NCBI RefSeq assembly: GCF_964213995.1
Contig: NC_135809.1
Coordinates: 109,244,001-109,308,000, forward strand
Origin: Mustelus asterias
Lineage: Eukaryota
DNA length: 64,000 nt
Direction of reading: 5' to 3'
Position numbers and translations under genes: made by a program. The stretch's first letter is position 1, and every line of letters starts with the position of its first letter. Shown here in pieces: positions 5,508-45,422 of this stretch. The notes below the pieces were generated by a model. That model did no database searches, was not told the DNA's origin, and was given only the letters and a program-made list of their open reading frames with translations.

Positions 5508-5846
5508 AAACTTTGGAAGTGACAATATTTGCAAACCCAAAGAGTGTCTTAGTGAATGAAGATATTTCCCTGGAATGTAAGTTTACTGGCTATGATGCAG
5601 CAGGCTTCAGCCTAGACAATGTAGGTGTCCAATGGATTGGGCCCAACGGTCAGGATATCTATGTCTTTAATGGAGGAATTGCTTCTCCAAAAAGAAATGG
5701 AGCAAAAATGTCAACAGCCGACTTACAGAAAGGAGATGCTTCACTTCATCTTCTGGACATACAGCTTACTGAAGAAGGGCAGTACACTTGTATTGTGTTT
5801 GTTACGCCTGAAAAGGTAGAAAAGAAATCGGGATTGGAAGTCTCAG
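5508..5846 (+). CDS. NCR3LG1: Gene A exon: IgV domain (D1), B7-H6-like
   Basis: tttag|AA ACT TTG...GTC TCA G|gtaag; LEC...VGVQW...GDASL...EEGQYTC has both Cys and the core Trp. Confidence 0.92.
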
Positions 5847-8800: not shown

Positions 8801-11800
8801 ATTGGATATTATTCTTAAGCAGGCATGCAATGATTGTGATTGCTTTTAATATCTGCATCTTATGTATGATGTAACCTTAATAAAGCTGTGAATGGATAGA
8901 GAGAACCCCATACCTTGATTGGTATATGTTAATTACTTGTAATCAAATTTGAAACTATAATTGCTTGTCCTGAATTCTGTGCTCTGGCTAGATACAGACC
9001 TTACAGGGTCCTCGCTATAGCTTAAAATTAAAACAGCTGTTTCAGAGAACTCCGTGACTTGATCTGGTTCTTGAAGGGATCAAAGTTGTGAACAATTTAA
9101 AGGCTGAACATCAAAGCCCACAACAGCAAGCGTTCACTTGATTGTTTCCTGTGATGAGAGGGTTGCCGATGATGTGAGACTGAATACATTAGGTCTATAT
9201 ACTCTGGAAATACAAGAACTCACAGGTGATATTGAAACATTCAAGATTATGAAGGGGCTTAGCAGCGTTTTTTCCCCTGGCTGGGGATTCTGGAACATGG
9301 GGGTACAGTCTTGGGGCAAGAGGGTGATCATTTAGGAGTGAGATGAGGAGAGATTTCTTCATTCAAAGGGTTGCGGATCTTTGGAAGTCTCGATCCCAAA
9401 GAGTTGTGATGCTCCATCATTGAATATGTTTAAGGCTGAGGTACACAGAATTTTGGTGTCTCAGGGAACTAAAGGATATGAGGAGTGGGTAGGACGGTTA
9501 AGTTGAAGTGGAGGATCAGCTATGATCATTTTAGATGGCAGAGAGGGCTTAACAGGCCATATGGTCTCCTCCTGCTCCTCTTATGTTTTATCTCAAAACG
9601 CATTGAGCTCCAAATAGTTCTAAACTATGGTTCCTAAATTTTAAATTGTTTAATTATTTCTTTGTGACCTGGGCCTTCCATATCTCTGTAATCTCCTGCA
9701 GGCTTTGCAAACCCCATCCAGAATGCACCTTTTTTTTTTGGCTGCAACCTCCCTCATTCCAGCATTCCTTCAGTAACCCAAGTCCTTTTATTTTGGTATT
9801 TCCTACCAAAGCATCTTATGTGTTGGTTCAGGCTCATTTGGTAGCACTTATATCTTTCAGTCAGAAGCTTGTTGTTTCGTGTCCCACTCCAGAACTTGAA
9901 TCAAACAATTAAAAGCTGATACTGCATTGTGCATCACTGAGGGAGTTCTGTACTGTCAGAGGTGTGGTGTCTCGATGAGATACTAAACGAAGGCCCTGTC
10001 GATCTCTCGGAGATAGTGTTGTCCCATCTTTTAAATCCACCTGAGAAGAATGGAAGAGTTACCTTTAGGAAAACCAATCTTCTGGTCATTATCACATTGT
10101 TTGTGGGAGACGGTTGTGTGCAAATTGGCTGCCATGATTCCGACATTACAACAGTTGCACTTCAAAAGTACTGAATTGATTGTAAAAATGATCTTTGGTT
10201 TTCGAGGTGATTTATAAACTGCATGTATTTTTTCTTCCACTTTCTTTTCCTCCTTTTGGAGGTTAGGTAAAGATGTTTTATCCCTCTTCTCCCGTTCCTC
10301 CCCATCCTTGTTGGTGATGGATAAATCTGGAATGTTCCCGTCCAAATTTGAGATTAATTTACTCTGGGTATAATTGTACACCATCTTGTAGAAACCTGTA
10401 TGAAAGGAAGACAAGTGTTGTTTTTGGTACATGGTTGTATGGAATAACTTAGATCTGCGTTTAGCCTATCTGATCTATTATATTTGTCTTTAATGCAGCT
10501 CGGCCAGCGGTCAGTTTATCCACAGAACAGATCAACATTTTGATTGGATCCGAGGGGACCTTGAGTTGTGATGTTACGGGATTTTATCCTAAGCAGCATG
10601 AACTCGTCTGGCAATATATCCCAAACACAGAATCTAAGAAACCAAAGGAACTGAAAGATAAAATCTGCACTGGTGCCACCACTCCCAGTAATAATGGAAC
10701 CTTCAGTGTTTCCAGCAGAATAAGAATTGTACCAACATTGTATGATGATGGAGATGTGTACAGATGTTTAGTGACTCACCGGTCAGCTCGTCCTGATGGC
10801 ATTTCACAAGAAAGTACACTCAAAGTGGAAGGTATGTTCCTTTCTTTTGCAAAAGATTTTTCAGTGCGTTTTTATTAAAGCTTACAAACATTTAAGCCTA
10901 TTTATTACCATTGAATTTCTACTTCAATTTGCATCTGACTTAAATCAGGAATTCATCCTTTATTATTCCACAATTTAAATGACGATTGTATGCAATAATT
11001 ATTCAAATTAACCAGACAAAATTGAGCAATGATATCTGTGTTTAAAAGTTGTTTAATTGTACCACATGCTAGAGTTATGTGCACATTGCTTTTAAAGTCA
11101 GTTTTATTAAACCGCTGTCAACATTAGTTGAACAGGCTTATCATCAAATAAGTGAAACCTGCTTATGCCCAGGTATAATGTTTGAATCAGTTTGAGAATG
11201 TCGGAAATTTAGAGAACAATGAATACCATGAGATCCCATTTAATGGTTGCATTCCTGAAAATTTTGACTATGTGAAACAACCTTGATTCCTATGGGAACT
11301 CAATGTTAAAGCTGGAGTTTTGTTTTTCTAGGCGCGATGTGTCTGAAGGAACCCATGTAAAAGCTTTACCATACATGTGCAGTGCTGTGCATTCCTAGCT
11401 GGAATAACCTGAAAAATAAAATAAATAATTGAACCTAACAGAAATATTGTATGAATTCAGATTAGATAACACTAAATCAACCAAACAAACCCTGAGTAAC
11501 ATAGCTTCTGTGTCTCACCCACAGAAACTCAGCTCAATTTTTTGCTTGCTTTCCTTTTGCACTGTCTCTGTCTCCTTTCCCATTCTGTCTGTCTCTTTCT
11601 CTTCCTAATCCCTGTCTCAATTACTATCCTGTCTAATCCCCATCCTGCTCTGACTGACTCCCAGTCCGAGGCTGCAGCTGAGCCCACTGCCTAGACTTCT
11701 TCCTGCTCATCTACAGAGGCACAGTCCAGCCCTGGGCCGTGGATTGTGTTGGATGGGGAAGGAGGTGGATTTAGCTGGGCATCTCCCTTGCTGTCTCCTT

Positions 11801-14800
11801 CTCCACACCTCTCTTTTCTCCCCCCCCCCCCACGCACACACCTGCACACTCAAAGTTTACTCACACATCACCACCTAATTAATGCTCAGAAACTTCCCAC
11901 ACTGAGCCAACATGCCACTGCTCTGAGTTCTGGCTGATTGTCCTGGCTGAGACTCTGTATTAGGCTCCCTGGCCTGCCCTCCTGCTCCCGGCTCCCTGGC
12001 CTTGCAGTAGCTTTCTGCTGAAGGTGGTGGCACGGCCGGTATCGGACCGTGGTAAGGGTGGGGACTGCCAAAGTGCAAATGATGTAAACATGAAAATGAT
12101 GACGCCAACTGGAAAAAGCAGGACCAAAATAACAAGGTTTCCCTAACAGACATTAGAGAACCAGGTGGGTTTTTTCCGACAATCGATTCATGGTCATTTT
12201 TAGATGTTTAATTCCTGTTGTTTTATTGAGTTTTTATATTCTACCACCTGCCATGGTGGGATTCGAACCCGGTTCCCCAGAGCTCTGGCTCTCTGGATTA
12301 CTAGTCCATCGCCTCCCTGAAGACTTTTGTTGCAGGACTTGCCACGCCACTGGCTAAGCTATTCCAGTATAATAAATTTTGGCATAGATGCCAAGATGAT
12401 AAGTTGCCCAGTTATGTCCTGTCCACAAAAAACAGGATAAATCCAAACCAGTCAATTACTGCTCCATCGGTCTACTCTCAAAAATCAGCAAAGTAATGGA
12501 AAGCATTGTGGACAGCGCTATGAAGCGGCACTTACTCCACAATAACCTGCTCTCTGATGCTCAGATTGGGTTTCACCATGGGCACTCGGCTCCCAAATGC
12601 ATTACAGCCTTGGTCATGAATAGCAGAACTGAAATTGAGAGGGAATGTGTGAGTGACAGTCCTTGACATCATGGCAACATTTGCCTAAGTGCGCCACCAA
12701 GGAGCTCTGGGAAACCTGAGGTCAATGGGAATCAAGGAGTGCGGGAAAGCTTTCTATGGGTCAGAGTCTAATCTGCAAACAGTGTTTCCCACTCGTGGCT
12801 AACAAAAATCAGATGTGACTGGAGGCTGCTTTGAGGGCAGCTGCCTCAGTGAATCCTGGATGAGCCTGTATGAAAGGTGCCACATTTGGGGGGCAATATT
12901 TCCAGATTGGGAAGAAAGGATCTTCGTCACTGTGCAAGTTCAGGCCGAAATTGACCATAGTTCCTTATTTGCCTGCTGCAGTCTTTGGTTAAAACTGTCT
13001 TTGAAAAATCTTTACTCTAATTTCCATTATTCTTATTTTCACCACTCCAATATGCATGCAAATGAACTGACCTATGAAATTACAGAGTAAATACTTCTCT
13101 GGGTCATCGGTATTTTCATTAGTGCAAAAGGAGTGTGGTTCACCGCATTTTTAGGCTATTTAGAGAGTTTGTTAACAGCACAGGTCTGTAATTTCAGATT
13201 CCTTAAAGACTTTTATATATTTAAATATCTTAAATTATGATTTTTTTTTAAATGGAGTAATCCGAGAACACATTTGGTGCAAGTGACAGTTTATTGTGGC
13301 AATTTTAGTCTAAATGCTTCTGTATTTTTTTTCAACTTTCAGAGCCTAAGGAATATTCAGCAGTACCAGCAGTTGTTACAAGTATAATTGTTACACTGCT
13401 GGTATGTGCAGCATCGGTTCTCGCTGCAATTTTATATTGGCGCAAATTTAGAGGAGGTAATGTATATACTAGTGAAACCTTTTTATTGTGCAGTAATTTT
13501 GTATTTGTGTGGACGTTGTTCTTGTCATTCTTTGGCCTTGTGTGTTTGTGTGTCCAGCACAGAGTTAGAAAAAGTAACCTGGAGTTAACATTTAGCTCTG
13601 GGCGATCTGGCTGCAAATTACACTCCAGTGTTTCTACGGAAATGAATTTTCATATTGTCAAATGTAAAGTGCCATCATTAACCAGTGCAATTTTGGTTTA
13701 AGAAATATTCTTTCATGTTCTTAAGCATAGTAATTTAGAATCACCACTAACAGGATGCTGCCATCAAGTCAAAAAGACATTTTGCCCATCACCGAAATGA
13801 ATACTGTGGTATATGAATTTCGGTGCCAGTGCAATGTTTGGTATATACAAAGACTGACAGATTGTATCAAACAGCTGTTCCCTTCCATTGTTCGCAACAG
13901 GAAAGGTGCAGACTTTATCCAACTATGATGTGCTTGCAAAACTCAAAAACAGTGTCAACATTAAATGTAATTCCACAATTGGACATTTGCTAAATAAGCC
14001 TCAATGTACTAAGGATTATGCTGACAAGCAATTTTGCGTGTACTGAAGGCGATATATTAATTCACAGGGCCCTGTTCTTTGCGAGCAGGTACACGCATTG
14101 GGACTGTTTCAACTAAAAAAAAGTGACAGCATTCTTCAGGATAATGCCTTGACCAGAGTCCCATTGCCTGGTTTAAATTGGCAGTCACCATTAACTGGTG
14201 CATTTTCCATGGTGATGTCTCTACCGATCAAGAGTCCGCTTACCAACCAATCAGCATCTCATCTGATTGTGGTTCACTTTACATTTGATATTCTTGCAAA
14301 TTATCCTGATGAGTGCAAGATGAAAGAACTTCAAAGAACAATACAGCAAAGGAACAGGCCCTTCAGCCCTCCAAGCCTGCGCCGCTCATGTGCCCACTAG
14401 ACCATTCTTTTGTATCCCTCTATTCCCAGTCTGTTCATGTGTCTATCTAGATAAGTCTTAAACGATCCCAGCGTGTCCGCCTCAATCACCTTGCTTGGCA
14501 GTGCATTCCAGGCCCCCACCACCCTCTGTGTAAAATATGTCCCCCTGACATCTGTGTTGAACCTTGTCCCCCTCACCTTGAACCCATGACCCCTTGTGTT
14601 CGTCACCTCCGACCTGGGAAAAAGCTTCCCACTGTTCACCCTATCTATGCCCTTCATAATTTTATAGAAATCATAGAAACCCTACAGTACAGAAAGAGGC
14701 CATTCAGCCCATCGAGTCTGCACCGACCACAATCCCACCCAGGCCCCACCCCCATATCCCTATATATTTACCTACTAATCCCTCTAACCTACACATCTCA

Positions 14801-26800: not shown

Positions 26801-29800
26801 AAGTCTTGTCTTGTCAACTTGGATCTTGTTTGTCCTTCATCTGGGGACCATGGTTTGGACTTAATTTGAATTGGCTTTTTTGATTAGAAATGAAGAAAGG
26901 TAGCCAAAAAAACTTTATTTACCATCTCTGGACAGTGGATGCCCCAGTCCCTTGCTCTAGTTACTTTCAAATACTTCTAAGCTAATCTGTTTTGGATGCT
27001 TTATTTGCTGAAAGACTATAGGGACCATTGGGGAGTCGGTTAGCTCAGTTGGCTGGCTGGTTAGTTCATCATGCAGAGTGATGCCAACAACACGGGTTCA
27101 CTTTCCAGACCAGTTGAGGTTATTCATCAAGGCCTGCCTTCTCAACCTTGCCCCTTGCCTGAGGTGTGGTAATCCTCAGGTTAAATCACCAGTCAGCTCT
27201 CCGGCTGAAAGGGAAGAGCAGCCTATAGTCATTTGGGTCTATGGTGATTTTATCTTTATGGGAACACTGTAAATTCTCTCACTAGTTTCAAAGTAAGCAG
27301 TCTGCCAACTTCTGACAAAATTCAAACTGTGATTAATCCTCATCTGCCTTGCATATGGTGAATAGTGACTTTCCTTTACTCTGCTTATAGTGCAGGTCTA
27401 TTTAACTGCCATTCACTTTGGCTTTCTCCTTTCTGTGAGCTGCAAGCCACATGATGTCCAAATTGCAGCTAACTCTTGGGAACAGCCAGATAAACCTGAA
27501 TGCTCCACCTGCTGTTTGATGTTAATAGCTTGAAAGACAATATCATAAAAGGGCCTCAAAACTTTAGCATAATAGACTCTAAGCTTGTTTTAATTGCATT
27601 TGCACCATTTTCTATAGTTAAGACATTCATTCCCAAAATCAAAAAGCCATACTCTAAAACATATAAAATGTGGACTAGATATTTGCAACATAGTATTAAA
27701 CTGATGGCATAGCAAAAATTGTTGAGGATCAAACTTGGATTGATACGTATTACATTGATATAACTAGAATGCCTCCTGAATCAATTCTCTAATGCAACAC
27801 GCTTGCAACAAATAAAGCTGAGCTATACATGCAGCTGTAAGACCTTTCAACCTGAATTCTCCCTCACACACACACCCTGCTGGCAGGTCTTTAGATGGGA
27901 GAGCATGCATGCAATTTTACGGTGGGGCAGACCAGGCCTCTGACGATGCTTGCCCCTGAATAATTCCTTAAATAGCCACTTAAGGACCCTTTCCCACCGA
28001 GCTTCACTTATTGGGCTTCAGACAGGGGGCATCCTCCACTCAGGGCTATGCTTCCATTGATTCCCAGGATCTCAGGAGCCAACCATGGCTGCCTCTAACA
28101 GGATGCTGGCATTGCCTTTATTTTGTAGATAATTTTAAGTATGAAGGGATGAGCTACCTGCTTCGGAGTGCCTTCAGAAACTGTGCCATGTCACTTACAT
28201 TCCTGCTTTGCTTGTGGGCTTTGCTTTCAGCAGTAGAATTAGTACTAAATTGTGCTATTCCAACATAATTGCAATTATCAAATCAGTAGCATGAATGTTC
28301 TGTAAGTAAGATTTTTTTTTAAGTTGTCATAGTCTTTGAAAAAAGCCTAAGTTGCACAATGGTAAATCTGATGACTGCTCCTGTATAAAAGTCTATGGCT
28401 TGTATAAAAGTTGAACATGTGGGGGGAAAAAAGCCATCTTTTGAATCTCCTTTTTGATACTTCAACCTGATGACTATTTGGTATAGTAGTCAACTGTAGT
28501 TTCATGCTATTTTTACAGGAATTCCATCTGTTGAAGAAATCAAATTTGACCCACCAGAAGCCACATATGGTTCCGATCTTGTTTTGATCTGCAGCATCTC
28601 TAACTTTTACCCACAAACTATTGAAACAGTTTGGCGAAATAAAGGAGGCCAGATAATCAAAGGGATCACAATTAAAGGACCTGTGAAGGACGAAAGCGGA
28701 TGTTATCGGTTGACTTCCCAATTGCAAGTAAAACCAACTGCACAAGATTATGATGAAGTATTTTCCTTCCATGTGAATCACGTGAAATTAAAAGCTCCAA
28801 TTGTAAAACAGACATATCTAACACTTCCAGGTAGGTTTTGTCCTGATCCTTCTATCTACAAGTTTGAAAAGTTCCACTTCATATTTAAATATTTGTGATT
28901 TAAGTGAATGCATTCACTAGGCCACGCACAAATAAGTGGGATGGCACGGTGGGGTGGCATGGTAGCACAGTGGTTAGCACCGCTGCTTCACAGCGCCAGG
29001 GACCCGGGTTCAATTCCCGGCTTGGGTCACTGTCTGTGTGGAGTCTGCATGTTCTCCCCCGTGCCTGCGTGGGTTTCATCCAGGTGCTCCGGTTTCCTCC
29101 CACATTCTGAAAGGCATGCTGATTAGGTGCATTGACCCGAATAGGCACCGGATTGGGGCGAATAGGGGAATTTCACAGTAACTTCATTGCAGTGTTAATG
29201 TAAGCCTTACTTGTGACTAATAAATAAACTTTATTTTAACTTTACTTTAATCTGGCAGAATCCGACTAGATATGGGGTTGGGGGGTAAGAACACACATTT
29301 ATTATGAGCCATTTCATATTAAATAACTGTGAAGCAAATTCGAATTCGATAAATTGGAGAAAGAAGACTTCAATTTAAGTTACTTAAAGGAAGGATATTT
29401 GATTTAAGGCAGTTATATTCACTGTAAAATATTACATTCCAATTAAATGCATCTTGGAAGTTCTGAACCTTTTTCTTGCCTGAGGACATCAGTTCTTCAG
29501 CTTGTTTAAAATATCAAACTTTCAGAACAAATCTGTTGAATAGGATTTGGACTTTTTTCTTTTGTGTGATACAATTTCCTTCCTGAGTATTAATTCAATG
29601 ACCTTTGTTGTCTGGGATGTCCCTTTGACACCTATGAGTGCCTGTTACAACATGCTGCTGTAAAATGGTACACCAAAGTACATAGAACATAGAACAGTAC
29701 AGCACAGAACAGGCCCTTCGGCCCACGATGTTGTGCCGACCTTCATCTGAAACCAAGATCAAGCTATCCCACTCCCTACCATCCTGGTGTGCTCCATGTG

Positions 29801-32800: not shown

Positions 32801-35800
32801 CTCCTGCACCATCCCTGCAACCACATGTTTAAGTGCACTCTCTCCCTGTTCCTCAACTCGCTATCACGTGGCACCGGCAACGTACCAGAGATGACCACAT
32901 GTTTTGTCTTTGCTCTCAGCTTCCAGCCCAGCTCCCGAAATTCCTGTTTTAAATCCCCGTCCCTTCTCCTACCTATGTCGTTGGTACCAATGTGTACCAC
33001 GACTTGTGACTGTTTCCCCTCCCCCTTAAGAATCCGGAAAACACGGTCCGAGACGTCACGGACCCTGGCATCCGGTAGGCAACAAACCATCCTCGAGTCT
33101 CTTTTGCTGCCACAGAACCTCCTATCTATCCCTCTAACTAACGAGTCCCCAATAACTATTGCCCTCCCGCTCTCCTCCTTACCCTCCTTACCCTCCAAAG
33201 TACTCCACCAGATCAGTGCTATTTTCAAAAGAACCTTTTCTGTACCTATGTAAGTTGTACATTCACAGAAGATATTACAATAATTCTGATGGTAACCTTT
33301 GAGCAAGTTCATGTGATCTTAACTTTAATAAATTTGTGTATAATTCAAACTAGAAGAAAAGATTAATTCATTTGCTTCAAGAGCTAAACATTCATGCCCA
33401 TTTTTGTTTGTTTTTCAGCTCATTCTCCTGCCTTGTCTTCTATTAAAGTTGATCCAACACACCCTGAAGCTGGTCAGCTTGTAACATTCAGTATCTCACT
33501 GGCAAGCTATGCTCCTGAAGCTGTCCAAATGAAGTGGTTTAAAAATGGGAAATCTTGTTCAGGACTAGTTAACACTCGCCCTGTGATTGCTGATGATGGT
33601 CTCTTTTCATCAGTCGCAAGCATACAATTTATGGCGAATGAGAATGATCATGAGAGTTTGATCAGATGCGAAGTGCTTCACATAGCAACAAACGAAATTC
33701 AAGATAAAAATTTCAAATTACTCCTTAAAGGTGAGTGTTGTTTCATGGGATCGAATTCATAGAACATAGAACAGTACAGCACAGAACAGGCCCTTCGGCC
33801 CACGATGTTGTGCCGAGCTTTATCTGAAACCAAGATCAAGCTATCCCACTCCCTCTCATCCTGGTGTGCTCCATGTGCCTATCCAATAACCGCTTAAATG
33901 TTCCTAAAGTGTCTGACTCCACTATCACTGCAGGTAGTCCATTCCACACCCCAACTACTCTCTGCGTAAAGAACCTACCTCTGATATCCTTCCTGTATCT
34001 CCCACCACGAACCCTACAGTTATGCCCCCTTGTAATAGCTCCATCCACCCGAGGAAATAGTCTTGAACGTTCACTCTATCTATCCCCTTCATCATTTTAT
34101 AAACCTCTATATTAAGTCTCCCCTCAGCCTCCTCCGCTCCAGAGAGAACAGCCCTAGCTCCCTCAACCTTTCCTCATAAGACCTACCCTCCAAACCAGGC
34201 AACATCCTGGTAAATCTCCTCTGCACTCTTTCCAGCGCTTCCACATCCTTCTTATAGTGAGGTGACCAGAACTGCACACAATATTCCAAATGTGGTCTCA
34301 CCAAGGTCCTGTACAGTTGCAGCATAACCCCACGGCACTTAAACTCCAACCCCCTGTTAATAAAAGCTAACACACTATAGGCCTTCTTCACAGCTCTATC
34401 CACTTGAGTGGCAACCTTTAGAGATCTGTGGATATGGACCCCAAGATCTCTCTGTTCCTCCACAGTCTTCAGAACCCTACCTTTGACCCTGTAATCCACA
34501 TTTAAATTAGTCCTACCAAAATGAATCACCTCACATTTATCAGGGTTAAACTCCATTTGCCATTTTTCAGCCCAGCTTTGCATCCTATCTATGTCTCTTT
34601 GCAGCCTACAACAGCCCTCCACCTCATCCACTACTCCACCAATCTTGGTGTCATCAGCAAATTTACTGATCCACCCTTCAGCCCCCTCCTCTAAGTCATT
34701 AATAAAAATCACAAAGAGCAGAGGACCAAGCACTGATCCCTGCGGCACTCCGCTAGCAACCTGCCTCCAATCCGAAAATTTTCCATCGACCACCACTCTC
34801 TGTCTTCGATCAGACAGCCAGTTACCTATCCAATCGGCCAACTTTCCCTCTATCCCACACCTCCTCAGTTTCATCATAAGCCGACCATGGGGGACCTTAT
34901 CAAACGCCTTACTAAAATCCATGATTATGACATCAACTGCCCTACCTTCATCAACACACTTAGTTACCTCCTCAAAAAATTCTATCAAATTTGTGATGCA
35001 CGACTTGCCCTTCACGAATCCGTGCTGACTATCCCAGATTAATCCGCATCTTTCTAAATGGTCGTAAATCCCATCTCTAAGGACCTTTTCCATCAATTTA
35101 CCAACCACCGAAGTAAGACTAACCGGTCTATAATTACCAGGGTCATTTCTATTCCCTTTCTTAAACAGAGGAACAACATTCGCCATTCTCCAGTCCTCTG
35201 GCACCATCCCCGTGGACAGCGAGGACCCAAAGATCAAAGCCAAAGGCTCTGCAATCTCATCCCTTGCCTCCCAAAGAATCCTAGGATACATTTCATCAGG
35301 CCCAGGGTACTTATCGACCTTCAGTTTATTCAAAACTGCCAGGACATCCTCCCTCCGAACATCTATTTCCTCCAGCCTATTAGCCTGTAACACCTTCTCT
35401 TCCTGAAAAACATGGCCCCTCTCCTTGGTGAACACTGAAGAAAAGTATTCATTCATCACCTCGCCTATCTCTACTGACTCCATACACAAGTTCCCACTAC
35501 TGTCCTTGACCGGCCCTAACCTCACCCTGGTCATTCTTTTATTCCTCACATAAGAGTAAAAAGCCTTGGGGTTTTCCTTGATCCGACCCGCCAAGGACTT
35601 CTCATGTCCCCTCCTAGCTCTCCTCAGCCCCTTTTTCAGCTCATTCCTTGCTAACTTGTAACCCTCAATCGAGCCATCTGAACCTTGTTTCCTCATCCCT
35701 ACATAAGCTTCCCTCTTCCTTTTCACAAGACATTCCACCTCTTTCGTGAACCATGGTTCCCTCACTCGGCCATTTCCTCCCTGCCTGACAGGGACATACC

Positions 35801-38800
35801 TATCAAGGACTTCCAGTATTTGTTCCTTGAAAAAGTTCCACTTTTCATTAGTTCCTTTCCCTGCCAGTTTCTGTTCCCAACTTATGCCCCCTAATTCTTG
35901 CCTAATCGCATCATAATTACCTCCCCCCCCCAATTGTAAATCTTGCCCTGCCGTACGGCCCTATCCCACTCCATTGCAATAACAAAAGACACCGAATTGT
36001 GGTCACTATCTCCAAAGTGCTCTCCCACAACCAAATCTAACACTTGGCCCGGTTCATTTCCCAGTACCAAATCCAATGTGGCCTCATCTCTTGTCGGCCT
36101 ATCCACATATTGTGTCAGGAAACCCTCCTGCACACACTGCACAAAAACTGCCCCATCCGAACTATTTGACCTACAAAGGCTCCAATCAATATTTGGAAAG
36201 TTAAAGTCCCCCTGTGACCCCCACACATATCCATAATCTGCTTAGCAATTTCTTCCTCCACATCTCGATTACTATTTGGGGGCCTATAGTAAACTCCTAA
36301 CAACGTGACCGCTCCTTTCCTATTTCTAACCTCAGCCCATATTACCTCAGTGTGCAGATCCCCCTCGAAGTGCCTTTCCGCAGCCGTTAAACTATCCTTG
36401 ATTAACAATGCCACTCCTCCACCTCTTTTACCAGCTTCCCTACACTTAGTGAAACGTCTATACCCCGGAACGTCCAACAACCATTCCTGTCCTTGTTCTA
36501 CCCACGTCTCCGTAATGGCCACAACATCGTAGTCCCAAGTACCAAACCACGCCCCAAGTTCATCTACCTTGTTCCGGATGCTCCTTGCATTGAAGTGGAC
36601 ACACTTCAACCCACCTTCCTGTCTACCGGTACCCACCCTTGACCCTGATACCTTCCCCAATACCTCACCACTCTCACTGACTTCTAGACTACAACTCCTT
36701 TTCCCACTCCCCTGACTTATTAGTTTAAACCCCCCTGAAGAGCCGTAACAAATTTCCCTCCTAGGATATTGGTGCCCCTCTGGTTCAGGTGCACCCCGTC
36801 CTGTTTGTACAGGTCCCACCTTCCCCAGAATGTGTTCCAATTATCCACGTATCTGAAACCCTCCCTCCTACACCATCCCTGCAACCACATGTTTAACTGC
36901 ACTCTCTCCCTGTTCCTCAACTCGCTATCACGTGGCACCGGCAACGTACCAGAGATGACCACATGTTTTGTCTTGGCTCTCAGCTTCCAGCCCAGGTCCA
37001 GAAATTCCTGCTTTAAATCCCCATCCCTTCTCTTACCTATGTCATTGGTACCAATGTGTACCACGACTTGTGACTGTTTCCCCTCCCCCTTCAGAATCCG
37101 GAAAACACGGTCTGAGACGTCACGGACCTTGGCATCCGGTAGGCAACATACCATCCGTGAGTCTCTTTTGCTGCCACAGAACCTTCTATCTATCCCTCTA
37201 ACTAACGAGTCCCCAATAACTATTGCCCTCCCGCTCTGCCCCTTACCCTCCTGAGCCACAGAGACGGACACAGTGCTGGAGATCCTCTCACTGCGGCTCA
37301 CCACTGGTATGTCATCCCCCTCAACCGTATCCAAAGCGGAATACTTGTTGCTAAGGGGAACGACCACAGGGGATCCCTGCACTGACTGCTTCCTCCCAGC
37401 CCCTCTCACCGTCACCCATCTGTTTTCATCTGAATTCGGAATAAAGCATTTCATTACAATTGCTATAATTGCAATATTGATGGTTTTGTTGAACTCGGAG
37501 GTACTCATTTGCATGTTTATTTGACATTGAAACTTCATATTGGATAAACATTTTTTTTACGACTGGGAATAGTTAATTTTTGGTAAATTCAGTTTCTTTC
37601 AATACTATTGAATGAGTTACTTAATACTCTTAACATTGGTCAAATGAAATAAACATTTCCATGTATTTAACCAAGTTTCTCTGTTAAGGTATTGGCAGTG
37701 AAGATGCAGTTTATGAAATCCAAGGAAATGATGAAGGTAAAGTATTCACTTTGAGAAGTTCCTGTTTTGTGCATGTTTGTTGTAATCCATAATGGATCAG
37801 TGTAGCATTTCAGGTTACTATACAGAATAAACCAGATATTCCTTTTTAGATCTGCTTTCGGTTGTGGTAGAAGTATAAGGCAGTTAATGACATGATGACA
37901 TTCTGCATCCTATTTTCCATCATTACTGCCTGATTTACAGAGTTGTAAAGATGCTCATTGAGGGTTGCTGAGCAAAAGACAAAAAAAACACATTTAAAGA
38001 ACCAAACACAAATATGATTAAAGCTTTGCAAAATCCTTATTTCTTCAGTAATTTAGTATTTTTGTTTGCCGTTCCTAATGATTCATTCTCTGCCATTTGC
38101 CTTCAGACAAGACAGGACATACATTTCTAATTCGTATGCTCCCTGGAAGGGAAGGGAAGGGAAGGGAAATCAGGCTGGTGAGATTGCGCTGGAAGCTCTT
38201 GACATCTACCCATTAGTAGCCCACACTTGAGGATTTATTGGAGCAGCAGCCTAGGCATGTGGATAAAATAGAGCTCAGCGATTTCCTAGCTGCAGAGCAT
38301 ATTTCTGCCACATTAAGATAAAACTGCCACATCTGGTCATTGCACAAACTTTTCCCCGAGTGCATCAACTAATAGTTTTTCTTCATCCTATCTAATCAAA
38401 TCCAATTTCAACACATCTTTAGTGCAACCATATTTTTAATCAAAATGTGAATAGTGTGTGTGCACATAGCTCGTGATTTTCTTAGGTGCCTTCTAATTGA
38501 CAAGATGATATGAGTTGACTGGATCTTGTGCCATTTCCTCAAGGCAGGAGAGGTGGACCTACTGTTGGCTGCTGAGAGCCTGCACTCTTTCCTTCCTTAT
38601 GCTGGCAACTGGGGCTATCTTTGCGCATAAAAATGATTACAGTGAGATAAACAAAGAGCCATGAGACATTCCTCCTCAGTCTGACACACAGTCTACGGTG
38701 ACAGCTGGAAAAACTTTGAACGAACTGCTGACTATTCTCGTGGCCTCCGATGGGTTGTCCCCTATTCAAACGTTCGAAGGTGGATTACAGTGCACAGAGT

Positions 38801-41130
38801 GGACTCCAGTTTGTCCATCAATTTCTGACTGTTCTTGGTTCTGTATATAATTAAAAACAGAAACCTTAAATCATAATGTCATTGTTTGAGAATGGGCAAT
38901 GCATCTTGATCCTTCAGTCAGCAGCTTGTTTTACTGCATCTCATCAGTATTACATTATTCATGTACCAACCCTTTGGGCGTGTGTGCACACATATCTCTG
39001 TCCTGGTCGTTGGGAGGGGAGAGAATGAGTGCTAGTTCTCACTCTACAAGACTGGATGCACTGAGCACAGCCTCACTGCATTCAGACACACTTAGAAAAA
39101 GAAGAGAAATAAAGCTTAGAATAGAAATTCAGGAATGGAGCTTATGTTAATTTTAATTGAAATAGTAATCAGGATCTTATGCTGTGTTTCACTGAAGATT
39201 AATGAAAGGTTCCACAGGACAAACCCTATGTGGCAAATACCTTTTCTGATTTCCTGTCTGTATCACCCAAAGTGCTTGCCTCAATCCACATGGCTCTCTC
39301 CACATTGAAGTGTTATGTTTCAGTTTTGGGGACTACCAAAAGTTGCCATCTTCTGATTTTAAGACTTCTTCCTTGCAGAAATCATGCAAAAAGTGCAAAC
39401 GATCTGTTGTCCTTATGCACAGTAAACCTGATATATCAGAATGCAGACAATAGTGGATACAAGGGCAACCTTTGCATCATTCAGACACCGGCCCCTGCCT
39501 GAGCTTGGCATTCCCCAACTTAGCTTTGCTTCACCTGGGCAGGCAGCCCTCGACACATTCGCCACCACCGGTGATCGCTGCTCCTGCACTGTTTCTCTCC
39601 CTCATTTGCTTCTGATCACTTATCAGCAACAAATGTGGGAATAGAATGGCCTGTGATTGGAAGATCAGCCCTTTGCAAAATCTTGAATTTCATTTGCCTG
39701 CATTTGAACTGACCGGCCTGTGTGCCAGCTTTTGAGCAGTAGCTTTGGGGACCACATAAAAGGCCTGCAGCCCATGGACCTTCAGTTGATGAAGCCTGGT
39801 AGCAGACAGTCAATAATGCACTGGCTTCTTGAATCTTGGTAAGAAGTCTCACAACACCAGGTTAAAGTCCAACAGGTTTATTTGGTAGCAAATACCATAA
39901 GCTTTCGGAGCACAGCTCCTTCGTCAGATGGAGTGGTTATCTGTTCTCAAACAGTGCAAACGAAGGACGAAGGAGCTGTGCTCCGAAAGCTTATGGTATT
40001 TGCTACCAAATAAACCTGTTGGACTTTAACCTGGTGTTGTGAGACTTCTTACTGTGCTAACCCCAGTCCAACGCCGACATCTCCACTTCTTGAATCTTAC
40101 CAGATCTGCTACAGTGTTCAAGCTTTTTGTAATATGGAGTGACTTGATGCTTAATAGTTGATGTCATGCTAACTGTCCCACTTATCTCCTGTGGCTCTCC
40201 CTTTGCCAGTTGCCAGGATGTGATATGTTTCATAATTGTTTCAACTTTAGTAAATATCTCTGAACTGGAAACATGCCCATTCTGATTGATAGTCCACAAA
40301 TATTTGCCCAGAAATGAATAAATTGTATCAATTTGGCTTTTCTGTGTAACTAGTATATAAATTACTAGTATATAAACTATTAAAAACCTTTTAGTATTTG
40401 TGTATAGCACTTTAATCTCGCAAAGTTCCCGGTGTGAAGAATAGAATTCCTCCTTGTATCTCACTCTTGGATATTTTTGTTTCTTTTATGGCTCCATCTC
40501 CATTATTCCTTTAACTCCACATACACTCAATTGAGACAGAAGGATGGCTAGACTGTCTCTGGCTGTTGTCCTGCTTATTTCTTTTCAAGGCTTGTGATTC
40601 CTGCAGGGACTTGGTGACAAATACCTCACTTCTTGCAGAATATTAGAAGCAGTTGAGACTAAAATGAAAAGGCCCCTAGTGTAGGAGTGCAGAGCTCTAC
40701 TGCTAGAATTTTCCTTGTATTAATAGAATTAAATCTATATCTATGTCACATTTTTAAGAGTTTTATTGTTATTAATTTTATTCCAACAGAGAATTTCCAG
40801 GAGGTGTCACAGATCACTTGCCGGACTGAATGTCCTAAAGCTGGCCAGCCTGTGACGGTTTCCTGCACAATTACAGGATCCGCCGTAGAAGACACCCACC
40901 TCACTTGGTACAGAGAGGTTTACCCTTTTGAAGATATGAGCTGCATTACCAATACACCGTTTAAAACTGGTGTAGGTTTCACCACTGCACTAACTTATGT
41001 ACCAAAGCAAGAGGATGGCAATTGTAAACTCCAAATTGAAGTGATCACTGAGATGGACCCAATTTGCAGAGAGTTCCAGCTGAAATTAAGTGGAGTTGGT
41101 ATTTCAGGAACAGGAAGCAGCTCATTGTGA
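5508..41130 (+). CDS. NCR3LG1: Gene A: B7-H6/NCR3LG1-like type I membrane protein, V-C1-TM followed by 7 Ig domains; join(5508-5846,10499-10831,13343-13456,19211-19636,19879-20259,21191-21499,25402-25722,28519-28830,33419-33730,37689-37736,40790-41130); about 1078 aa plus a leader exon not found in the window
   Basis: Every exon has an AG acceptor and all but the last have a GT donor. All junctions are phase 1 and the internal exon lengths (339,333,114,426,381,309,321,312,312,48) are all multiples of 3, giving one open frame to TGA 41128-41130. V-domain motif GDASLHLLDIQLTEEGQYTCIVFVTP resembles the B7-H6 V domain as I recall it. Confidence 0.8.
7015..7318 (+). mobile_element. HE1-like tRNA-derived SINE, CR1-type tail
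   Basis: GGCACAGTGGTT..CACTG head, TGTGTGGAGTTTGCAC core, GGGCCGAATG...GTAGGGATTCT tail. Confidence 0.8.
7791..8215 (-). mobile_element. HE1-like SINE, alternative tail, with nested Penelope fragment
   Basis: Same head and core; tail ...ACTTGTGACACCAATAAAT. Confidence 0.8.
7940..7974 (+). ncRNA. Minimal type I hammerhead ribozyme motif in a Penelope-like fragment (about 7927-8064)
   Basis: CAC-CTGACGA-A-GGAGC(AGC)GCTCC-GAAAGCT-A-GTG. Confidence 0.7.
8354..8643 (+). mobile_element. Penelope-like terminal-repeat fragment with degenerate hammerhead (8526-8560)
   Basis: CAC-CTGATGA...AAAAGCT-C-GTG and the family tail; near-TSD CTTTA(C/T)AAAAGTCA at 8340 and 8644. Confidence 0.7.
10499..10831 (+). 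CDS. NCR3LG1: Gene A exon: IgC1 domain (D2), extracellular
   Basis: tgcag|CT CGG CCA...GAA G|gtatg; LSCDVTGFYP...W...NNGTFSVSS...YRCLVTH is a canonical C1-set pattern with an NGT sequon. Confidence 0.92.
13343..13456 (+). CDS. Gene A exon: transmembrane segment (not in the ORF track)
   Basis: polypyrimidine tract then tttcag|AG CCT AAG...; translates (E)PKEYSAVPAVVTSIIVTLLVCAASVLAAILYWRKFRG, a hydrophobic helix followed by RKFR; ends GGA G|gtaatg; 114 bp, phase 1-1. Confidence 0.85.
13743..14325 (+). mobile_element. Penelope-like element remnant (GIY-YIG endonuclease region)
   Basis: Translates ...KDILPITEMNTVVYEFRCQCNVWYIQRLTDCIKQ, later HLLNK; CTGATGAG...GAAA near 14305-14325. Confidence 0.6.
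14325..17310 (-). mobile_element. CR1-clade LINE ORF2 remnant (different subfamily) with a nested SINE
   Basis: Frameshifted endonuclease/RT pieces 16556-17377, 15719-16258, 15251-15703, 15025-15327, 14397-14657. Confidence 0.92.
14664..15005 (-). mobile_element. HE1-like SINE, CR1-type tail, nested in a CR1
   Basis: Full head, core and tail; interrupts CR1 ORF2. Confidence 0.85.
17953..18211 (-). mobile_element. HE1-like SINE, alternative tail
   Basis: Head, core and ...GTGACACTAATAAAT tail. Confidence 0.8.
18816..19024 (-). repeat. Probable solo LTR (209 bp)
   Basis: TGTAAT...ATTACA inverted termini; flanks TCGTC/TTGTC (5-bp TSD with one CpG-type change); AATAAA on the - strand. Confidence 0.6.
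19211..19636 (+). CDS. Gene A exon: post-TM Ig C1-like domain D3 (no canonical Cys or Trp)
   Basis: tattag|TT CCT CCT...GGA G|gtaaat; VPPEITVS...ISYQVLRFRP...NGDGTFKV...LILHVHH. Confidence 0.85.
19879..20259 (+). CDS. Gene A exon: post-TM Ig C1-like domain D4 (both Cys present)
   Basis: cccaaag|TC CCA CCA...ACT G|gtatg; LTCSINGFKP...IIW...YICEVQH. Confidence 0.88.
20398..21082. mobile_element. Penelope-like insertion forming a perfect palindrome (arms 20428-20754 and 20756-21082)
   Basis: 327-bp arms around a 1-nt centre (identical mirror ORFs in the track); 13-bp TSD ATTAAATTATCTG at 20385-20397 and 21083-21095. Confidence 0.9.
20984..21020 (+). ncRNA. Minimal hammerhead ribozyme motif (mirror copy on the - strand at 20490-20526)
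   Basis: CAC-CTGAAGA-A-GGGGCT(CAG)AGCCTC-GAAAGCT-T-GTG. Confidence 0.7.
21191..21499 (+). CDS. Gene A exon: post-TM Ig C1 domain D5 (both Cys present)
   Basis: ttcag|CC CCT CCA...CTG G|gtaag; LYCRIHSFYP...VTWLK...DGLY...YTCQVEHESL. Confidence 0.9.
25402..25722 (+). CDS. Gene A exon: post-TM Ig C1-like domain D6 (F-strand Cys replaced by Met)
   Basis: tgtcag|TG TCC GTG...ATG G|gtaag; LSCKAFNFFP...IFW...EFKMQILH. Confidence 0.88.
26435..26793 (-). mobile_element. Second SINE-like family, copy 1 (partial copy at about 12150-12318)
   Basis: Closely similar to 61758-62102; - strand begins with a tRNA-like GATGGCCTAGTGGT...GGTTCGAATCC. Confidence 0.65.
28519..28830 (+). CDS. Gene A exon: post-TM Ig C1-like domain D7 (F-strand Cys replaced by Phe)
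   Basis: ttacag|GA ATT CCA...CCA G|gtagg; LICSISNFYP...TVW...VFSFHVNH. Confidence 0.88.
28952..29230 (+). mobile_element. HE1-like SINE, alternative tail
   Basis: A/B-box head TGGTTAGCAC...GGGTTCAATTCC; tail ACTTGTGACTAATAAATAAAC. Confidence 0.85.
29682..33194 (-). mobile_element. Young CR1-clade LINE, 5'-truncated, with intact ORF2
   Basis: ORF 29759-32776 has APE endonuclease and RT (SKFADDTK); partial ORF1 with SGNH esterase motif (VIGDSLVR); (TTCTATG)n tail; 9-bp TSD CCAAAGTAC at 29673-29681 and 33195-33203. Confidence 0.95.
29759..32776 (-). CDS. CR1 ORF2 endonuclease/reverse transcriptase (uninterrupted frame; true start uncertain)
   Basis: FNARSI, AITETW, MGDFN, SDHN, PGPD, DFSKAFD, GVPQGS, FADD motifs in one 1005-aa frame. 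Confidence 0.9.
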   Translation of the reverse strand: MEHVLGKVGPLQTGRGAPEPEGHQYPGREICYGSSGGFKLICQGSGKRSWSPEVSVEGGEVLGKVSRSRVGTGRQEGGLKCVYFNARSIRNKVDELGAWIATWDYDVVAITETWVEQGQEWLLDVPGYRRFTKCREAGKRGGGVALLIKDSLTAAEKHFEGDMHTEVIWAAVRNRKGAVTLLGVYYRPPNSNRDVEEEIAKQIMDTCGGHRVVVMGDFNFPNIDWSLCRSNSSDGAVFVQCVQEGFLTQYVDRPTRDEATLDLVLGNEPGQVLDLVVGENFGDSDHNSVSFVIAMERDRAGRQGKAYNWGRGNYDAIRQELGGIRWEQILSGKGTDEKWNFFKEQILGVLDRYVPVRQGGNGRVREPWFTKEVECLVKRKREAYVGMRKQGSDGSIEGYKLARNELKKGPRRARREHEKSLAGRIKENPKAFYSYVRNKRMTRVRLGPVKDSGGNLCMESVEIGEVMNEYFSSVFTKERGHVFQEEKVLQANRLEEIDVRREDVLAVLNKLKVDKSPGPDEMYPRILWEARDEIAEPLALIFGSSLSTGMVPEDWRVANVVPLFKKGNRNDPGNYRPVSLTSVVGKLMEKVLRDGIYDHLERCGLIRDSQHGFVKGKSCLTNLIEFFEEVTRCVDEGRAVDVIYMDFSKAFDKVPHGRLMMKVRRCGIEGKLADWIGNWLSDRRQRVVVDGKFSDWRQVASGVPQGSVLGPLLFVIFINDLEEGAEGWISKFADDTKIGGVVDEVEGCCRLQRDIDRMQSWAEKWQMEFNPDKCEVIHFGRANLNVDYRVKGRVLKTVEEQRDLGVHIHRSLKVATQVDRAVKKTYSVLAFINRGLEFKSRGVMLQLYRTLVRPHLEYCVQFWSPHYKKDVEALERVQRRFTRMLPGLECRSYEERLRELGLFSLERRRLRGDLIEVYKMMKGIDRVNVQRLFPRVDGAITRGHNYRVHGGRYRKDIRGRFFTQRVVGVWNGLPAVIVESDTLGTFKRLLDRHMEHTRMVGSGIA
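33419..33730 (+). CDS. Gene A exon: post-TM Ig C1-like domain D8 (B-strand Cys replaced by Ile)
   Basis: ttttcag|CT CAT TCT...AAA G|gtgag; VTFSISLASYAP...MKWFK...DGLF...IRCEVLH. Confidence 0.88.
33759..37431 (-). mobile_element. Second young CR1 LINE, near-identical to 29682-33194, frameshifted
   Basis: ORF2 split into 36115-36840, 35891-36226 and 34107-35933; ORF1 esterase part; same tail; GAATTC at both ends. Confidence 0.95.
37689..37736 (+). CDS. Gene A putative micro-exon: acidic Tyr-containing linker (G)IGSEDAVYEIQGNDE
   Basis: tttctctgttaag|GT ATT...GAA G|gtaaagt; 48 bp, phase 1-1, open frame, lying in non-repetitive intron sequence. Confidence 0.6.
39838..40085. mobile_element. Penelope-like insertion with 87-bp inverted arms (39839-39925 and 39966-40052)
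   Basis: Same family as the 20.4-kb element; 13-bp TSD CTTCTTGAATCTT at 39825-39837 and 40086-40098. Confidence 0.85.
39895..39931 (-). ncRNA. Minimal hammerhead ribozyme motif
   Basis: Reverse complement reads CCAT-CTGACGA-A-GGAGC(TGT)GCTCC-GAAAGCT-T-ATGG; stem I differs from other copies but still pairs. Confidence 0.7.
40790..41130 (+). CDS. Gene A terminal coding exon: Ig-like domain D9 plus C-terminal GVGISGTGSSSL*
   Basis: ccaacag|AG AAT TTC; VTVSCTITG...LTWYR...CKLQIEV (F-strand Cys replaced by Ile); no donor at the domain end; stop TGA 41128-41130. Confidence 0.82.
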
Positions 41131-44604: not shown

Positions 44605-45052
44605 TGTTGGAGTAAACTCCGAAATTAAAAGATACAAGATGTTACCTGGCACAAAATGGACTCTGTGAAAAGACATTAAGATGTGCTGACTTAGGCACAG
44701 ACATTGCACAACGAGTTAAATTCTGTTAGTGTCTAATTACTACAGGAAATAAATCAGACCTTGAAGCCCAGATGATCACCTTAGCTTGAGATAAAGCAGA
44801 ACCAAAACAATGAGTTTTAGTAACGAGATCAGTCTTTGATGGGAGGGCATTGATGTATAACGATGTGATAACTGCAAATGTCCTTACTTGTCCACTATTT
44901 GAAAATGTATAAAAGAAGCTCAGCTGCCATTTTAAAGTTGAGAAGGTGACTGCGTGCACTGCGGAGAGCCCAGCGCTTCTCCCAAAGCTTTGTCCGATAA
45001 ACTGCATGTTGAATCTTTAAATCTGACTCCGAGTGGTGATTTTCCCACAACA
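44605..45052 (+). repeat. ERV 5' LTR (448 bp)
   Basis: TGTTG...CAACA termini, TATAAAA near 44907, first ~290 bp repeated at 52477. Confidence 0.88.
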
Positions 45053-45055
45053 AAT

Positions 45056-45074
45056 TGGTGTAGTCAACAAGGAT
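45056..45074 (+). promoter_or_regulatory. ERV primer-binding site, tRNA-Ser-like (TGGTGTAGTCAACAAGGAT)
   Basis: 3 nt after the LTR end; resembles TGGCGTAGTCGGCAGGAT, the complement of a tRNA-Ser 3' end. Confidence 0.65.
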
Positions 45075-45422
45075 CTCACTGCTGGTGAGTTGATCAGTTG
45101 GCCTCGATCGGCGAACTGGAGTAAAGATTATTGAACCTGTGGGAGTCGGACTGAGCCAAGAATGCAGTTAAAAACGGGTGAAAATTAGGGGAATTTTTGG
45201 GACTATCGGATAGAAACAGGAATTGATTGCTTGTGCTGATCGACTAAGGACAAGGAAGTGCCTGTCTCAAACGCGCAGCCTTAGACCGGTTGTTAAGAGG
45301 GGAAATCCCCCACGTCAAGGTCAGGACCCTGAAGTGGGCGCAGAGGCACCAAGGCACTTAGGATCGTGAAGCACAAGTGATAAAGGTCATTTAGCATCAA
45401 ACTCTGTAATGGCGAACAAATG

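What the first reader, a model, noticed from the sequence alone, without database searches (positions are those of the whole stretch)
5508..41130. Inside-out Ig receptor: B7-H6-like ectodomain with seven tandem Ig domains on the cytoplasmic side
Seen: a 114-bp phase 1-1 exon at 13343-13456, absent from the ORF track, encodes a TM helix followed by RKFR. It lies between the V-C1 exons and seven further Ig-domain exons, and no second TM or signal exon is visible downstream. Established: V-C1-TM is the B7-family layout; the positive-inside rule places the sequence after RKFR in the cytosol; C1-set domains are normally extracellular (Ig, TCR, MHC, tapasin, SIRP). Inference: a ~1100-aa type I protein with a ~820-aa cytoplasmic chain of C1-derived domains, perhaps a scaffold, cytoskeletal tether or reverse-signalling arm on an NK-cell (NKp30) ligand. 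I cannot tell whether this layout has already been reported for B7-H6-like genes of cold-blooded vertebrates.
Basis: partly seen in the sequence, partly recalled or inferred. Interest (0 to 1): 0.93.

Follow-up and report, generated by a model that had tools for sequence, protein, structure and literature searches.

The report
B7-like receptor with cytoplasmic Ig chain
A shark gene, conserved from sharks to frogs, encodes a B7-type immune surface protein whose membrane anchor sits in the middle, so seven antibody-like domains are predicted to hang inside the cell, where such domains are not known to work.

Summary
The window holds phase 1-1 exons for V, C1, a 114-bp transmembrane (TM) exon (13343-13456) and seven further C1-derived Ig domains.

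All 11 exon translations are exact, consecutive substrings of a public RefSeq model, 'uncharacterized protein LOC144498906 [Mustelus asterias]' (1170 aa). That model joins the TM exon directly to D3 and ends at the stop codon at 41128-41130.

The layout is an old family. 69 of 150 representatives found with D4 have a strong internal TM followed by at least 300 aa of Ig domains; 68 of the 69 have no second hydrophobic segment. Members run from chimaera, sharks and rays to coelacanth, lungfish, bichir, amphibians and a teleost.

Indirect evidence fits a cytosolic chain:
- Glycosylation sequons are enriched 1.8-fold before the TM and only 1.16-fold after it.
- The canonical disulfide pair is kept in 72 of 85 pre-TM C1-like domains but only 185 of 406 post-TM domains.

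Against: the TM exon is skipped in annotated isoforms of two species, which would give a secreted nine-domain protein, and D4 and D5 keep their cysteine pairs.

Topology is untested. Six literature searches found no description.

The parts
5508..5846 (+). V-set Ig exon (B7-like), phase 1-1
   Evidence: Pfam V-set 8.7e-07. Splice sites. Best solved relatives are CD276 at 1.4e-12 and B7-H6 at 2.4e-07. Equals P0190 residues 94-205.
10499..10831 (+). C1-set Ig exon, membrane-proximal ectodomain
   Evidence: Pfam C1-set 3.7e-10. B7-H6 at 7.9e-11 among solved structures. One NGT sequon and the canonical Cys-Trp-Cys. Equals P0190 residues 207-316.
13343..13456 (+). Transmembrane exon, 114 bp, phase 1-1 (cassette-capable); acidic flank before it, RKFRG after it
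   Evidence: Sequence and splice sites. KD19 2.55. Aligns to the TM of Cetorhinus P0151. Equals P0190 residues 318-354. The homologous exon is skipped in Hemitrygon isoform X6 and Bombina isoform X2.
19211..19636 (+). D3: divergent C1-derived Ig domain, no canonical cysteines, begins about 5 residues after the TM
   Evidence: No Pfam or PDB sequence hit. hhalign to D4 gives 99.6%, E 7e-24. Equals P0190 residues 356-496.
19879..20259 (+). D4: C1-set domain with a long insert, canonical Cys pair kept, two sequons (NRT, NVT)
   Evidence: Pfam C1-set 8.9e-08. Used as the query that found the family. Equals P0190 residues 498-623.
21191..21499 (+). D5: classical C1-set domain, canonical Cys pair kept
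   Evidence: Pfam C1-set 1e-18. PDB hits to IgA, MHC I alpha3/beta2m and SIRP, down to 2.8e-22. Equals P0190 residues 625-726.
25402..25722 (+). D6: C1-set domain, F-strand Cys replaced (Met)
   Evidence: Pfam C1-set 5.4e-07. Cys columns. Equals P0190 residues 728-833.
28519..28830 (+). D7: C1-set domain, F-strand Cys replaced (Phe)
   Evidence: Pfam C1-set 7.5e-12. Cys columns. Equals P0190 residues 835-937.
33419..33730 (+). D8: C1-set domain, B-strand Cys lost
   Evidence: Pfam C1-set 2.3e-07. Cys columns. Equals P0190 residues 939-1041.
37689..37736 (+).
   Evidence: Found by a splice-site and acidity scan. Equals P0190 residues 1043-1057. Compare the YENI-containing acidic linkers of Cetorhinus, Carcharodon and S. 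torazame.
40790..41130 (+). D9: last Ig domain and terminal coding exon, stop TGA at 41128-41130
   Evidence: Weak Pfam V-set 0.0041. hhalign to D6 gives 99.0%. Sequence of the tail. Equals P0190 residues 1059-1170, the protein's end.

Best explanation
This is the Mustelus asterias member of an old, unnamed family of B7-H6-like genes.

Shown:
- One transcription unit encodes leader, V, C1, a TM exon, seven C1-derived Ig domains and an acidic linker.
- There is no second hydrophobic segment.
- The layout is conserved across non-amniote jawed vertebrates.

Inferred (mechanism):
- The signal peptide puts V-C1 outside the cell.
- The 23-25-residue hydrophobic segment, with an acidic flank before it and a basic flank after it, stops transfer.
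- The remaining 816 residues fold in the cytosol as a rod of seven beta-sandwich domains, tethered about 5 residues from the inner leaflet.
- Four of the seven domains (D3, D6, D7, D8) have lost the canonical disulfide, and glycosylation sequons are no longer enriched, as expected for a reducing, glycan-free compartment.
- The TM exon is symmetrical (phase 1-1), so skipping it yields a fully secreted nine-domain form. Splicing can thus switch the product between a membrane form and a soluble form.

Speculative: the cytosolic rod acts as a scaffold or an inside-out sensing arm, by analogy with the cytosolic B30.2 domain of butyrophilins.

My confidence in the gene model is about 0.93. My confidence that the chain is cytosolic in the main product is about 0.6.
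For: Gene model:
- All 11 exon peptides are exact, consecutive substrings of RefSeq protein P0190, which is 1170 aa long with the TM at 318-354.
- Orthologues with the same order include Cetorhinus, Carcharodon, S. torazame, Callorhinchus, Narcine, Hemitrygon, Amblyraja, Latimeria, Erpetoichthys, Protopterus and many amphibians.
- The Callorhinchus entry V9K7L7 (P0154) differs from the genome model at 8 residues and carries both the TM and the chain, so it is an independent sequence.

Family size: 69 of 150 representatives have an internal TM plus at least 300 aa after it.

Topology signals:
- 68 of 69 have no second hydrophobic segment.
- K+R averages 3.3 in the 10 residues after the TM against 1.5 before it (more after than before in 54 of 69).
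- D+E averages 0.7 after against 1.9 before.

Sequons:
- Ectodomain: 209 observed against 114 expected (z 9.5).
- Post-TM: 329 against 284 (z 3.1).
- The ectodomain is denser in 62 of 69 proteins (Wilcoxon 3.7e-11).
- In the 27 closest members the post-TM ratio is 1.07 (z 0.8).
- Ten classical Ig chains used as controls give 1.38.

Disulfides: both canonical Cys are present in 72 of 85 pre-TM C1-like domains against 185 of 406 post-TM domains. The losses are domain-specific and shared from shark to frog.

Selection: post-TM domains are as conserved as V and C1 (29-39% against 38-40% mean identity among 20 orthologues).
Against:
- TM-less isoforms are annotated in Hemitrygon (X6) and Bombina (NCR3LG1 X2). 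They differ from the TM forms by exactly 38 and 34 residues, so a secreted form in which D3-D9 are extracellular probably exists.
- The D4 and D5 cysteine pairs are nearly invariant in 20 orthologues.
- An NxT sequon in D4 is kept in 7 of 7 elasmobranch orthologues.
- The post-TM sequon count is still slightly above chance in the wide set (z 3.1).
- No recognised cytosolic domain follows the chain in the 6 long members scanned.
- C1-set domains are otherwise known only outside the cell (general knowledge).
- The RefSeq and other models are predictions. I could not see their RNA support.
Confidence: 0.6

Rival explanations
1. The Ig chain works outside the cell. The functionally relevant long product is the TM-skipped, secreted nine-domain protein. 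The TM-containing mRNA is a minor or regulatory variant that mainly serves to display V-C1 on the membrane.
For: - Annotated isoform pairs differ only by the TM exon in 2 species. The older S. torazame model also lacks it.
- The TM exon is phase 1-1, so skipping keeps the frame.
- The D4 and D5 Cys pairs are nearly invariant.
- The D4 NxT sequon is kept in 7 of 7 elasmobranchs.
- C1-set domains are otherwise extracellular (general knowledge).
Against: - The TM exon and its basic flank are conserved in 69 of 150 representatives across more than 400 million years.
- Most annotated isoforms contain it, for example 6 of 7 in Hemitrygon. The newer S. torazame model also has it.
- Post-TM sequon density is half that of the ectodomain and near chance.
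- 221 of 406 post-TM domains lack a canonical Cys.
Confidence: 0.27
2. The hydrophobic segment does not act as a simple stop-transfer anchor. It might be cleaved, or the chain might reach the lumen by some other route. Either way, D3-D9 end up outside the cell even in the TM-containing form.
For: D4, D5 and D9 keep cysteines typical of oxidised Ig domains. The linkers on both sides of the TM are very short.
Against: The segment has KD19 of 2.55 and a classical acidic-outside, basic-inside charge pattern, which is conserved. No second hydrophobic segment that could re-insert the chain exists in 68 of 69 members. No known mechanism translocates 800 residues after a stop-transfer signal (general knowledge).
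Confidence: 0.06
3. Annotation artefact: two neighbouring genes (V-C1-TM with a short tail, and a separate D3-D9 gene) are wrongly fused by gene predictors and by the first reader.
For: All models seen are predictions. A 5.7-kb intron with a LINE insertion separates the TM exon from D3.
Against: - No leader or start exon precedes D3, either here or in any orthologue. The hydropathy scan of 10800-19300 found no convincing leader exon.
- The same join is made in more than 20 species by different pipelines.
- TM-less isoforms join C1 to D3.
- The independent Callorhinchus sequence V9K7L7 spans both parts.
Confidence: 0.03

Closest known systems
B7-H6 / NCR3LG1 (human; PDB 3PV6, 4ZSO, 6YJP)
   Same: IgV plus C1-type IgC ectodomain followed by one TM. 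The C1 exon matches B7-H6 at 7.9e-11 and the V exon at 2.4e-07. NCBI names three frog family members NCR3LG1.
   Different: The human tail is not made of Ig domains (recalled, not tested here). Here 816 residues of seven C1-derived domains follow the TM. The V exon is nearer to CD276/B7-H3 (1.4e-12). NKp30 binding and orthology were not tested.
Butyrophilins (B7-related V-C-TM-B30.2 proteins such as BTN3A1; recalled)
   Same: B7-type ectodomain, one TM, and a folded beta-sandwich module in the cytosol that can drive inside-out signalling. This is the nearest functional analogy.
   Different: The butyrophilin cytosolic module is a single B30.2/PRYSPRY domain, not a chain of Ig C1-derived domains. 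No B30.2 was found in the 6 long members scanned.
UrIg2 of elasmobranchs (PMC12227049; passages read)
   Same: Non-rearranging shark gene with a V domain and a long run (9-11) of C1-type domains, plus a TM.
   Different: - In UrIg2 the TM is at the C-terminal end, so all its domains are extracellular.
- In the crystallised UrIg2 V-C1-C2-C3 fragment each domain has the canonical disulfide.
- UrIg2 domains C2-C9 are near-identical repeats. Here the domains are 20-30% identical and the TM comes after domain 2.
Cytosolic Ig rods (titin, obscurin, filamin; recalled)
   Same: Chains of Ig-fold domains that work in the reducing cytosol, mostly without disulfides.
   Different: Those are I-set or filamin-type domains, are not membrane-anchored by a TM, and have no ectodomain. 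Here the domains are C1-set by Pfam.

Membership tests
B7 family / B7-H6 (NCR3LG1) | N-terminal IgV domain followed by a membrane-proximal IgC (C1-type) domain | tested here: met
   Pfam V-set 8.7e-07 and C1-set 3.7e-10.
B7 family / B7-H6 (NCR3LG1) | Nearest solved relatives are B7 members | tested here: met
   V exon: CD276 at 1.4e-12, B7-H6 at 2.4e-07. C1 exon: B7-H6 at 7.9e-11, second best of 5663 matches.
B7 family / B7-H6 (NCR3LG1) | Single type I TM after the C domain | tested here: met
   KD19 of 2.55, acidic flank before and RKFRG after. The family-wide charge pattern agrees. This rests on sequence only.
B7 family / B7-H6 (NCR3LG1) | Orthology to NCR3LG1 (phylogeny, linkage to NKp30 genes) | not tested
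   There are only NCBI's automatic names for three frog members. No tree or synteny analysis was made.
B7 family / B7-H6 (NCR3LG1) | Binds NKp30 | not testable with these tools
   Needs a binding assay.
B7 family / B7-H6 (NCR3LG1) | Cytoplasmic tail without Ig domains (as in the human protein; recalled) | tested here: not met
   816 residues with seven Ig domains follow the TM.
Ig C1-set domain (Pfam PF07654) | Reaches Pfam's gathering score | tested here: met
   C1 and D4-D8 score 30.3-67.9 bits against a cut-off of 21. D3 and D9 do not reach it, but they are homologous to D4 and D6 by hhalign (99.6% and 99.0%).
Ig C1-set domain (Pfam PF07654) | Canonical B-F disulfide with the Trp pin | tested here: not met
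   Kept in C1, D4 and D5. Lost in D3 (both Cys), D6 and D7 (F-strand Cys) and D8 (B-strand Cys). Family-wide, 185 of 406 post-TM domains keep both.
Ig C1-set domain (Pfam PF07654) | Extracellular or lumenal location | not testable with these tools
   Sequence rules predict the opposite for D3-D9. This needs a topology assay.
UrIg / UrIg2 | TM (if any) at the C-terminal end, after all C domains | tested here: not met
   The TM lies between domains 2 and 3. The protein ends 10 residues after D9 with no hydrophobic segment.
UrIg / UrIg2 | Near-identical repeated C2/C3 units (shark UrIg2) | tested here: not met
   Domains are 20-30% identical to each other.

The most novel reading that the evidence does not exclude
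C1-set Ig domains, the hallmark of antibodies, T-cell receptors and MHC molecules, also have an ancient life in the cytosol. A whole family of B7-like receptors, from chimaera to frogs and at least one teleost, carries a membrane-tethered intracellular rod of C1-derived domains. This rod would sense or scaffold something inside the cell and report it through a B7-H6-like ectodomain to NK-type receptors. Skipping one 114-bp exon would send the same chain out of the cell as a soluble protein, so one set of domains would serve in two compartments.
Probability: 0.45. Interest if true: 0.92.

Novelty: new variant of a known kind. Interest (0 to 1): 0.8.

Why it matters
If the chain is cytosolic, this would be the first case known to me of C1-set Ig domains working inside the cell. 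It would also be a new way of building a B7-type receptor: an Ig rod where butyrophilins carry B30.2.

It would bear on how B7-H6/NKp30 recognition began. It would also bear on whether stress ligands for NK-type cells were originally coupled to an intracellular sensor.

The family is large in amphibians (many Xenopus paralogues), so it can be studied in a laboratory animal.

The proteins already sit in public databases as 'uncharacterized'. The claim can therefore be tested at once with tagged constructs and junction counts.

If instead the secreted form is the working one, the gene is still unusual, because it places its membrane anchor on a cassette exon in the middle of an Ig chain.

Tried and rejected
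1. Read evidence. The look-up of sequencing runs listed 12 runs, none on record as RNA.

2. The search for homologous proteins with D3 alone gave 1 candidate and no hit. The length limit excludes the full proteins, so this says nothing.

3. Second TM, leader or tail exons. Hydropathy scans gave nothing convincing.

4. A recognised cytosolic domain after the chain, which would have settled the topology. A Pfam scan of 6 long members found only Ig families at meaningful scores.

5. Tyrosine motif in the acidic linker. YENI occurs in Cetorhinus, Carcharodon and S. torazame, but the window has YEIQ, and chimaera, the three rays, coelacanth, bichir and the frog Rhinophrynus have no such motif in the linker (Amblyraja has Tyr only in repeated EDYGKKEN units). 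I dropped it as evidence.

6. 'The post-TM domains are more conserved than the ectodomain.' This holds for window against Cetorhinus but not for 20 orthologues (29-39% against 38-40%). I rejected it and claim only equal conservation.

8. Literature. There were six counted searches; one more was rejected for bad terms. Passages were read in PMC12227049, PMC10751288, PMC12619710, PMC3964593 and PMC12863176. Nothing describes Ig domains after the TM of a B7-like protein.
- Flajnik et al. 2012 (Immunogenetics; Xenopus and shark B7H6) and Ohta & Flajnik 2015 are not held. They, and the closed supplements of the UrIg2 paper, may bear on priority.
- From recall, the abstract of the 2012 paper reports a large Xenopus B7H6 cluster but no cytoplasmic Ig domains.

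9. Taxa. Names were seen for 30 of the 150 representatives and for 31 proteins. No amniote was among them. The other 120 were not named, so absence from amniotes is not shown.

Full report
WHAT IS THERE. The window has no N and a GC content near 0.43. Between 5508 and 41130 on the + strand lie eleven coding exons. All are in phase 1-1 with good AG/GT sites:
- V: 5508-5846
- C1: 10499-10831
- TM exon: 13343-13456
- D3: 19211-19636
- D4: 19879-20259
- D5: 21191-21499
- D6: 25402-25722
- D7: 28519-28830
- D8: 33419-33730
- Acidic linker micro-exon: 37689-37736
- D9: 40790-41130, ending in a TGA stop

The TM exon reads PKEYSAVPAVVTSIIVTLLVCAASVLAAILYWRKFRG, with a hydropathy mean of 2.55 over 19 residues. 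Pfam calls V a V-set domain and calls C1 and D4-D8 C1-set domains. D3 has no hit and D9 only a weak one. Profile-profile comparison on orthologue alignments shows that D3 (99.6% to D4) and D9 (99.0% to D6) are homologous to the other domains. The introns hold LINE-type reverse-transcriptase ORFs on the minus strand.

IT IS ONE ANNOTATED GENE. A profile search returned P0190, 'uncharacterized protein LOC144498906 [Mustelus asterias]', 1170 aa. All eleven exon translations are exact substrings of it. They are consecutive, each is separated by one residue, and that residue equals the translated junction codon. So the window comes from the starry smooth-hound, and the public model joins the TM exon directly to D3. 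Residues 1-92, which include the leader, are not in the window. I compared exon by exon and left out the step of joining the window's exons.

IT IS A FAMILY. A full HMMER scan with D4 gave 169 hits at E up to 0.001, of which 150 were listed.
- 69 of the 150 have a strong hydrophobic segment at residues 150-360 followed by at least 300 residues.
- The remaining 81 are fragments, partial models, TM-less models or classical Ig chains with a C-terminal TM.
- 68 of the 69 have no second hydrophobic segment.
- K+R averages 3.3 in the ten residues after the TM and 1.5 before it. D+E averages 0.7 after and 1.9 before.
- Names were seen for 61 proteins. They cover sharks, rays, the chimaera Callorhinchus, Latimeria, Protopterus, Erpetoichthys, many frogs, a caecilian, a newt and the teleost Electrophorus (si:ch211-180a12.2).
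- All are 'uncharacterized', 'Ig-like domain-containing', in one case 'hemicentin-1-like', or, in three frogs, 'natural cytotoxicity triggering receptor 3 ligand 1'.
- The Callorhinchus entry V9K7L7 differs at 8 of 1079 residues from the genome model and carries both the TM and the chain. From recall it is cDNA-derived.

IS THE CHAIN INSIDE THE CELL? This is shown only by sequence logic: signal peptide, one stop-transfer segment, and a conserved positive-inside pattern.

Two indirect tests agree.
- N-glycosylation sequons: 209 observed against 114 expected in the V-C1 part (z 9.5), and 329 against 284 after the TM (z 3.1). The ectodomain is denser in 62 of 69 proteins (Wilcoxon 3.7e-11). In the 27 closest members the post-TM ratio is 1.07. 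Ten classical Ig chains give 1.38.
- Canonical cysteine pair: kept in 72 of 85 pre-TM C1-like domains but in 185 of 406 post-TM domains. The losses are domain-specific: D3 lacks both, D6 and D7 lack the F-strand Cys, and D8 lacks the B-strand Cys. The same losses appear from shark to lungfish and frog.
- In the electric-eel protein I count by eye 8 sequons in the roughly 330 residues before the TM and 1 in the roughly 540 after it (sequence printed).
- The representatives are less than 50% identical to one another, but they are still related, so these are not independent trials.

EVIDENCE AGAINST.
- The TM exon is a symmetrical cassette. Annotated isoform pairs in Hemitrygon (X1 and X6) and Bombina (NCR3LG1 X1 and X2) differ by exactly that exon. 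Skipping it gives a signal peptide followed by nine Ig domains, which is a secreted protein.
- The D4 and D5 cysteine pairs are nearly invariant.
- One D4 sequon is kept in 7 of 7 elasmobranch orthologues.
- The post-TM domains are only as conserved as V and C1, not more so.
- No cytosolic signature domain is attached in the 6 long members scanned.

COMPARISON WITH WHAT IS KNOWN.
- The ectodomain is B7-like. V is nearest to CD276 (1.4e-12) and then B7-H6. C1 matches B7-H6 at 7.9e-11.
- It fails one feature of human B7-H6, a tail without Ig domains (recalled). Its NKp30 binding is untested.
- Shark UrIg2 also has many C1 domains, but its TM is at the end and the four domains of its crystallised V-C1-C2-C3 fragment each keep the disulfide (passages of PMC12227049).
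- Butyrophilins are the nearest functional analogy (recalled).
- Six literature searches found no description of this layout. Two key B7H6 papers are not held, and supplements are closed.

VERDICT.
- The one-gene model is very likely (about 0.93).
- A cytosolic Ig chain is the best reading (about 0.6).
- The main rival, at about 0.27, is that the secreted form is the one in which the chain works.
- I rate it a new variant of a known kind, of high interest, and directly testable.

Noticed in passing
window 43120-52366 (+): A retrovirus-like element with gag-, protease/RT-, integrase- and env-like ORFs. The env-like ORF (51005-52366) has its own TM anchor. The element lies between this gene's end and the next paralogue.
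   Followed up: no
window 63280-63642 (+), possible leader near 59070-59140: A second B7-like V exon, 41% identical to the V exon of this gene. It probably starts a tandem paralogue that runs off the window. Whether it also has a mid-protein TM and an Ig chain is unknown.
   Followed up: partly
window 15025-17377, 29759-33312, 34107-37538 (-): Three LINE-type reverse-transcriptase/endonuclease ORF sets sit on the minus strand inside the introns of the gene. The two downstream copies are near-identical to each other.
   Followed up: no
P0170 (Amblyraja radiata), P0034/P0187 (Anomaloglossus): The family is plastic in structure. The skate protein has V-C1 duplicated before the TM. One frog model has a signal peptide, then almost directly the TM, then the Ig chain; its longer sister model has the usual V-C1.
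   Followed up: partly
window 37689-37736; P0151, P0188, P0189: The acidic linker before D9 carries a tyrosine in an acidic context: YENI in three sharks and YEIQ here. It might be a phosphorylation or sorting motif. It is not conserved outside sharks.
   Followed up: partly
If real, it would be another case of C1 domains joined to cytosolic modules. It is unchecked.
   Followed up: no
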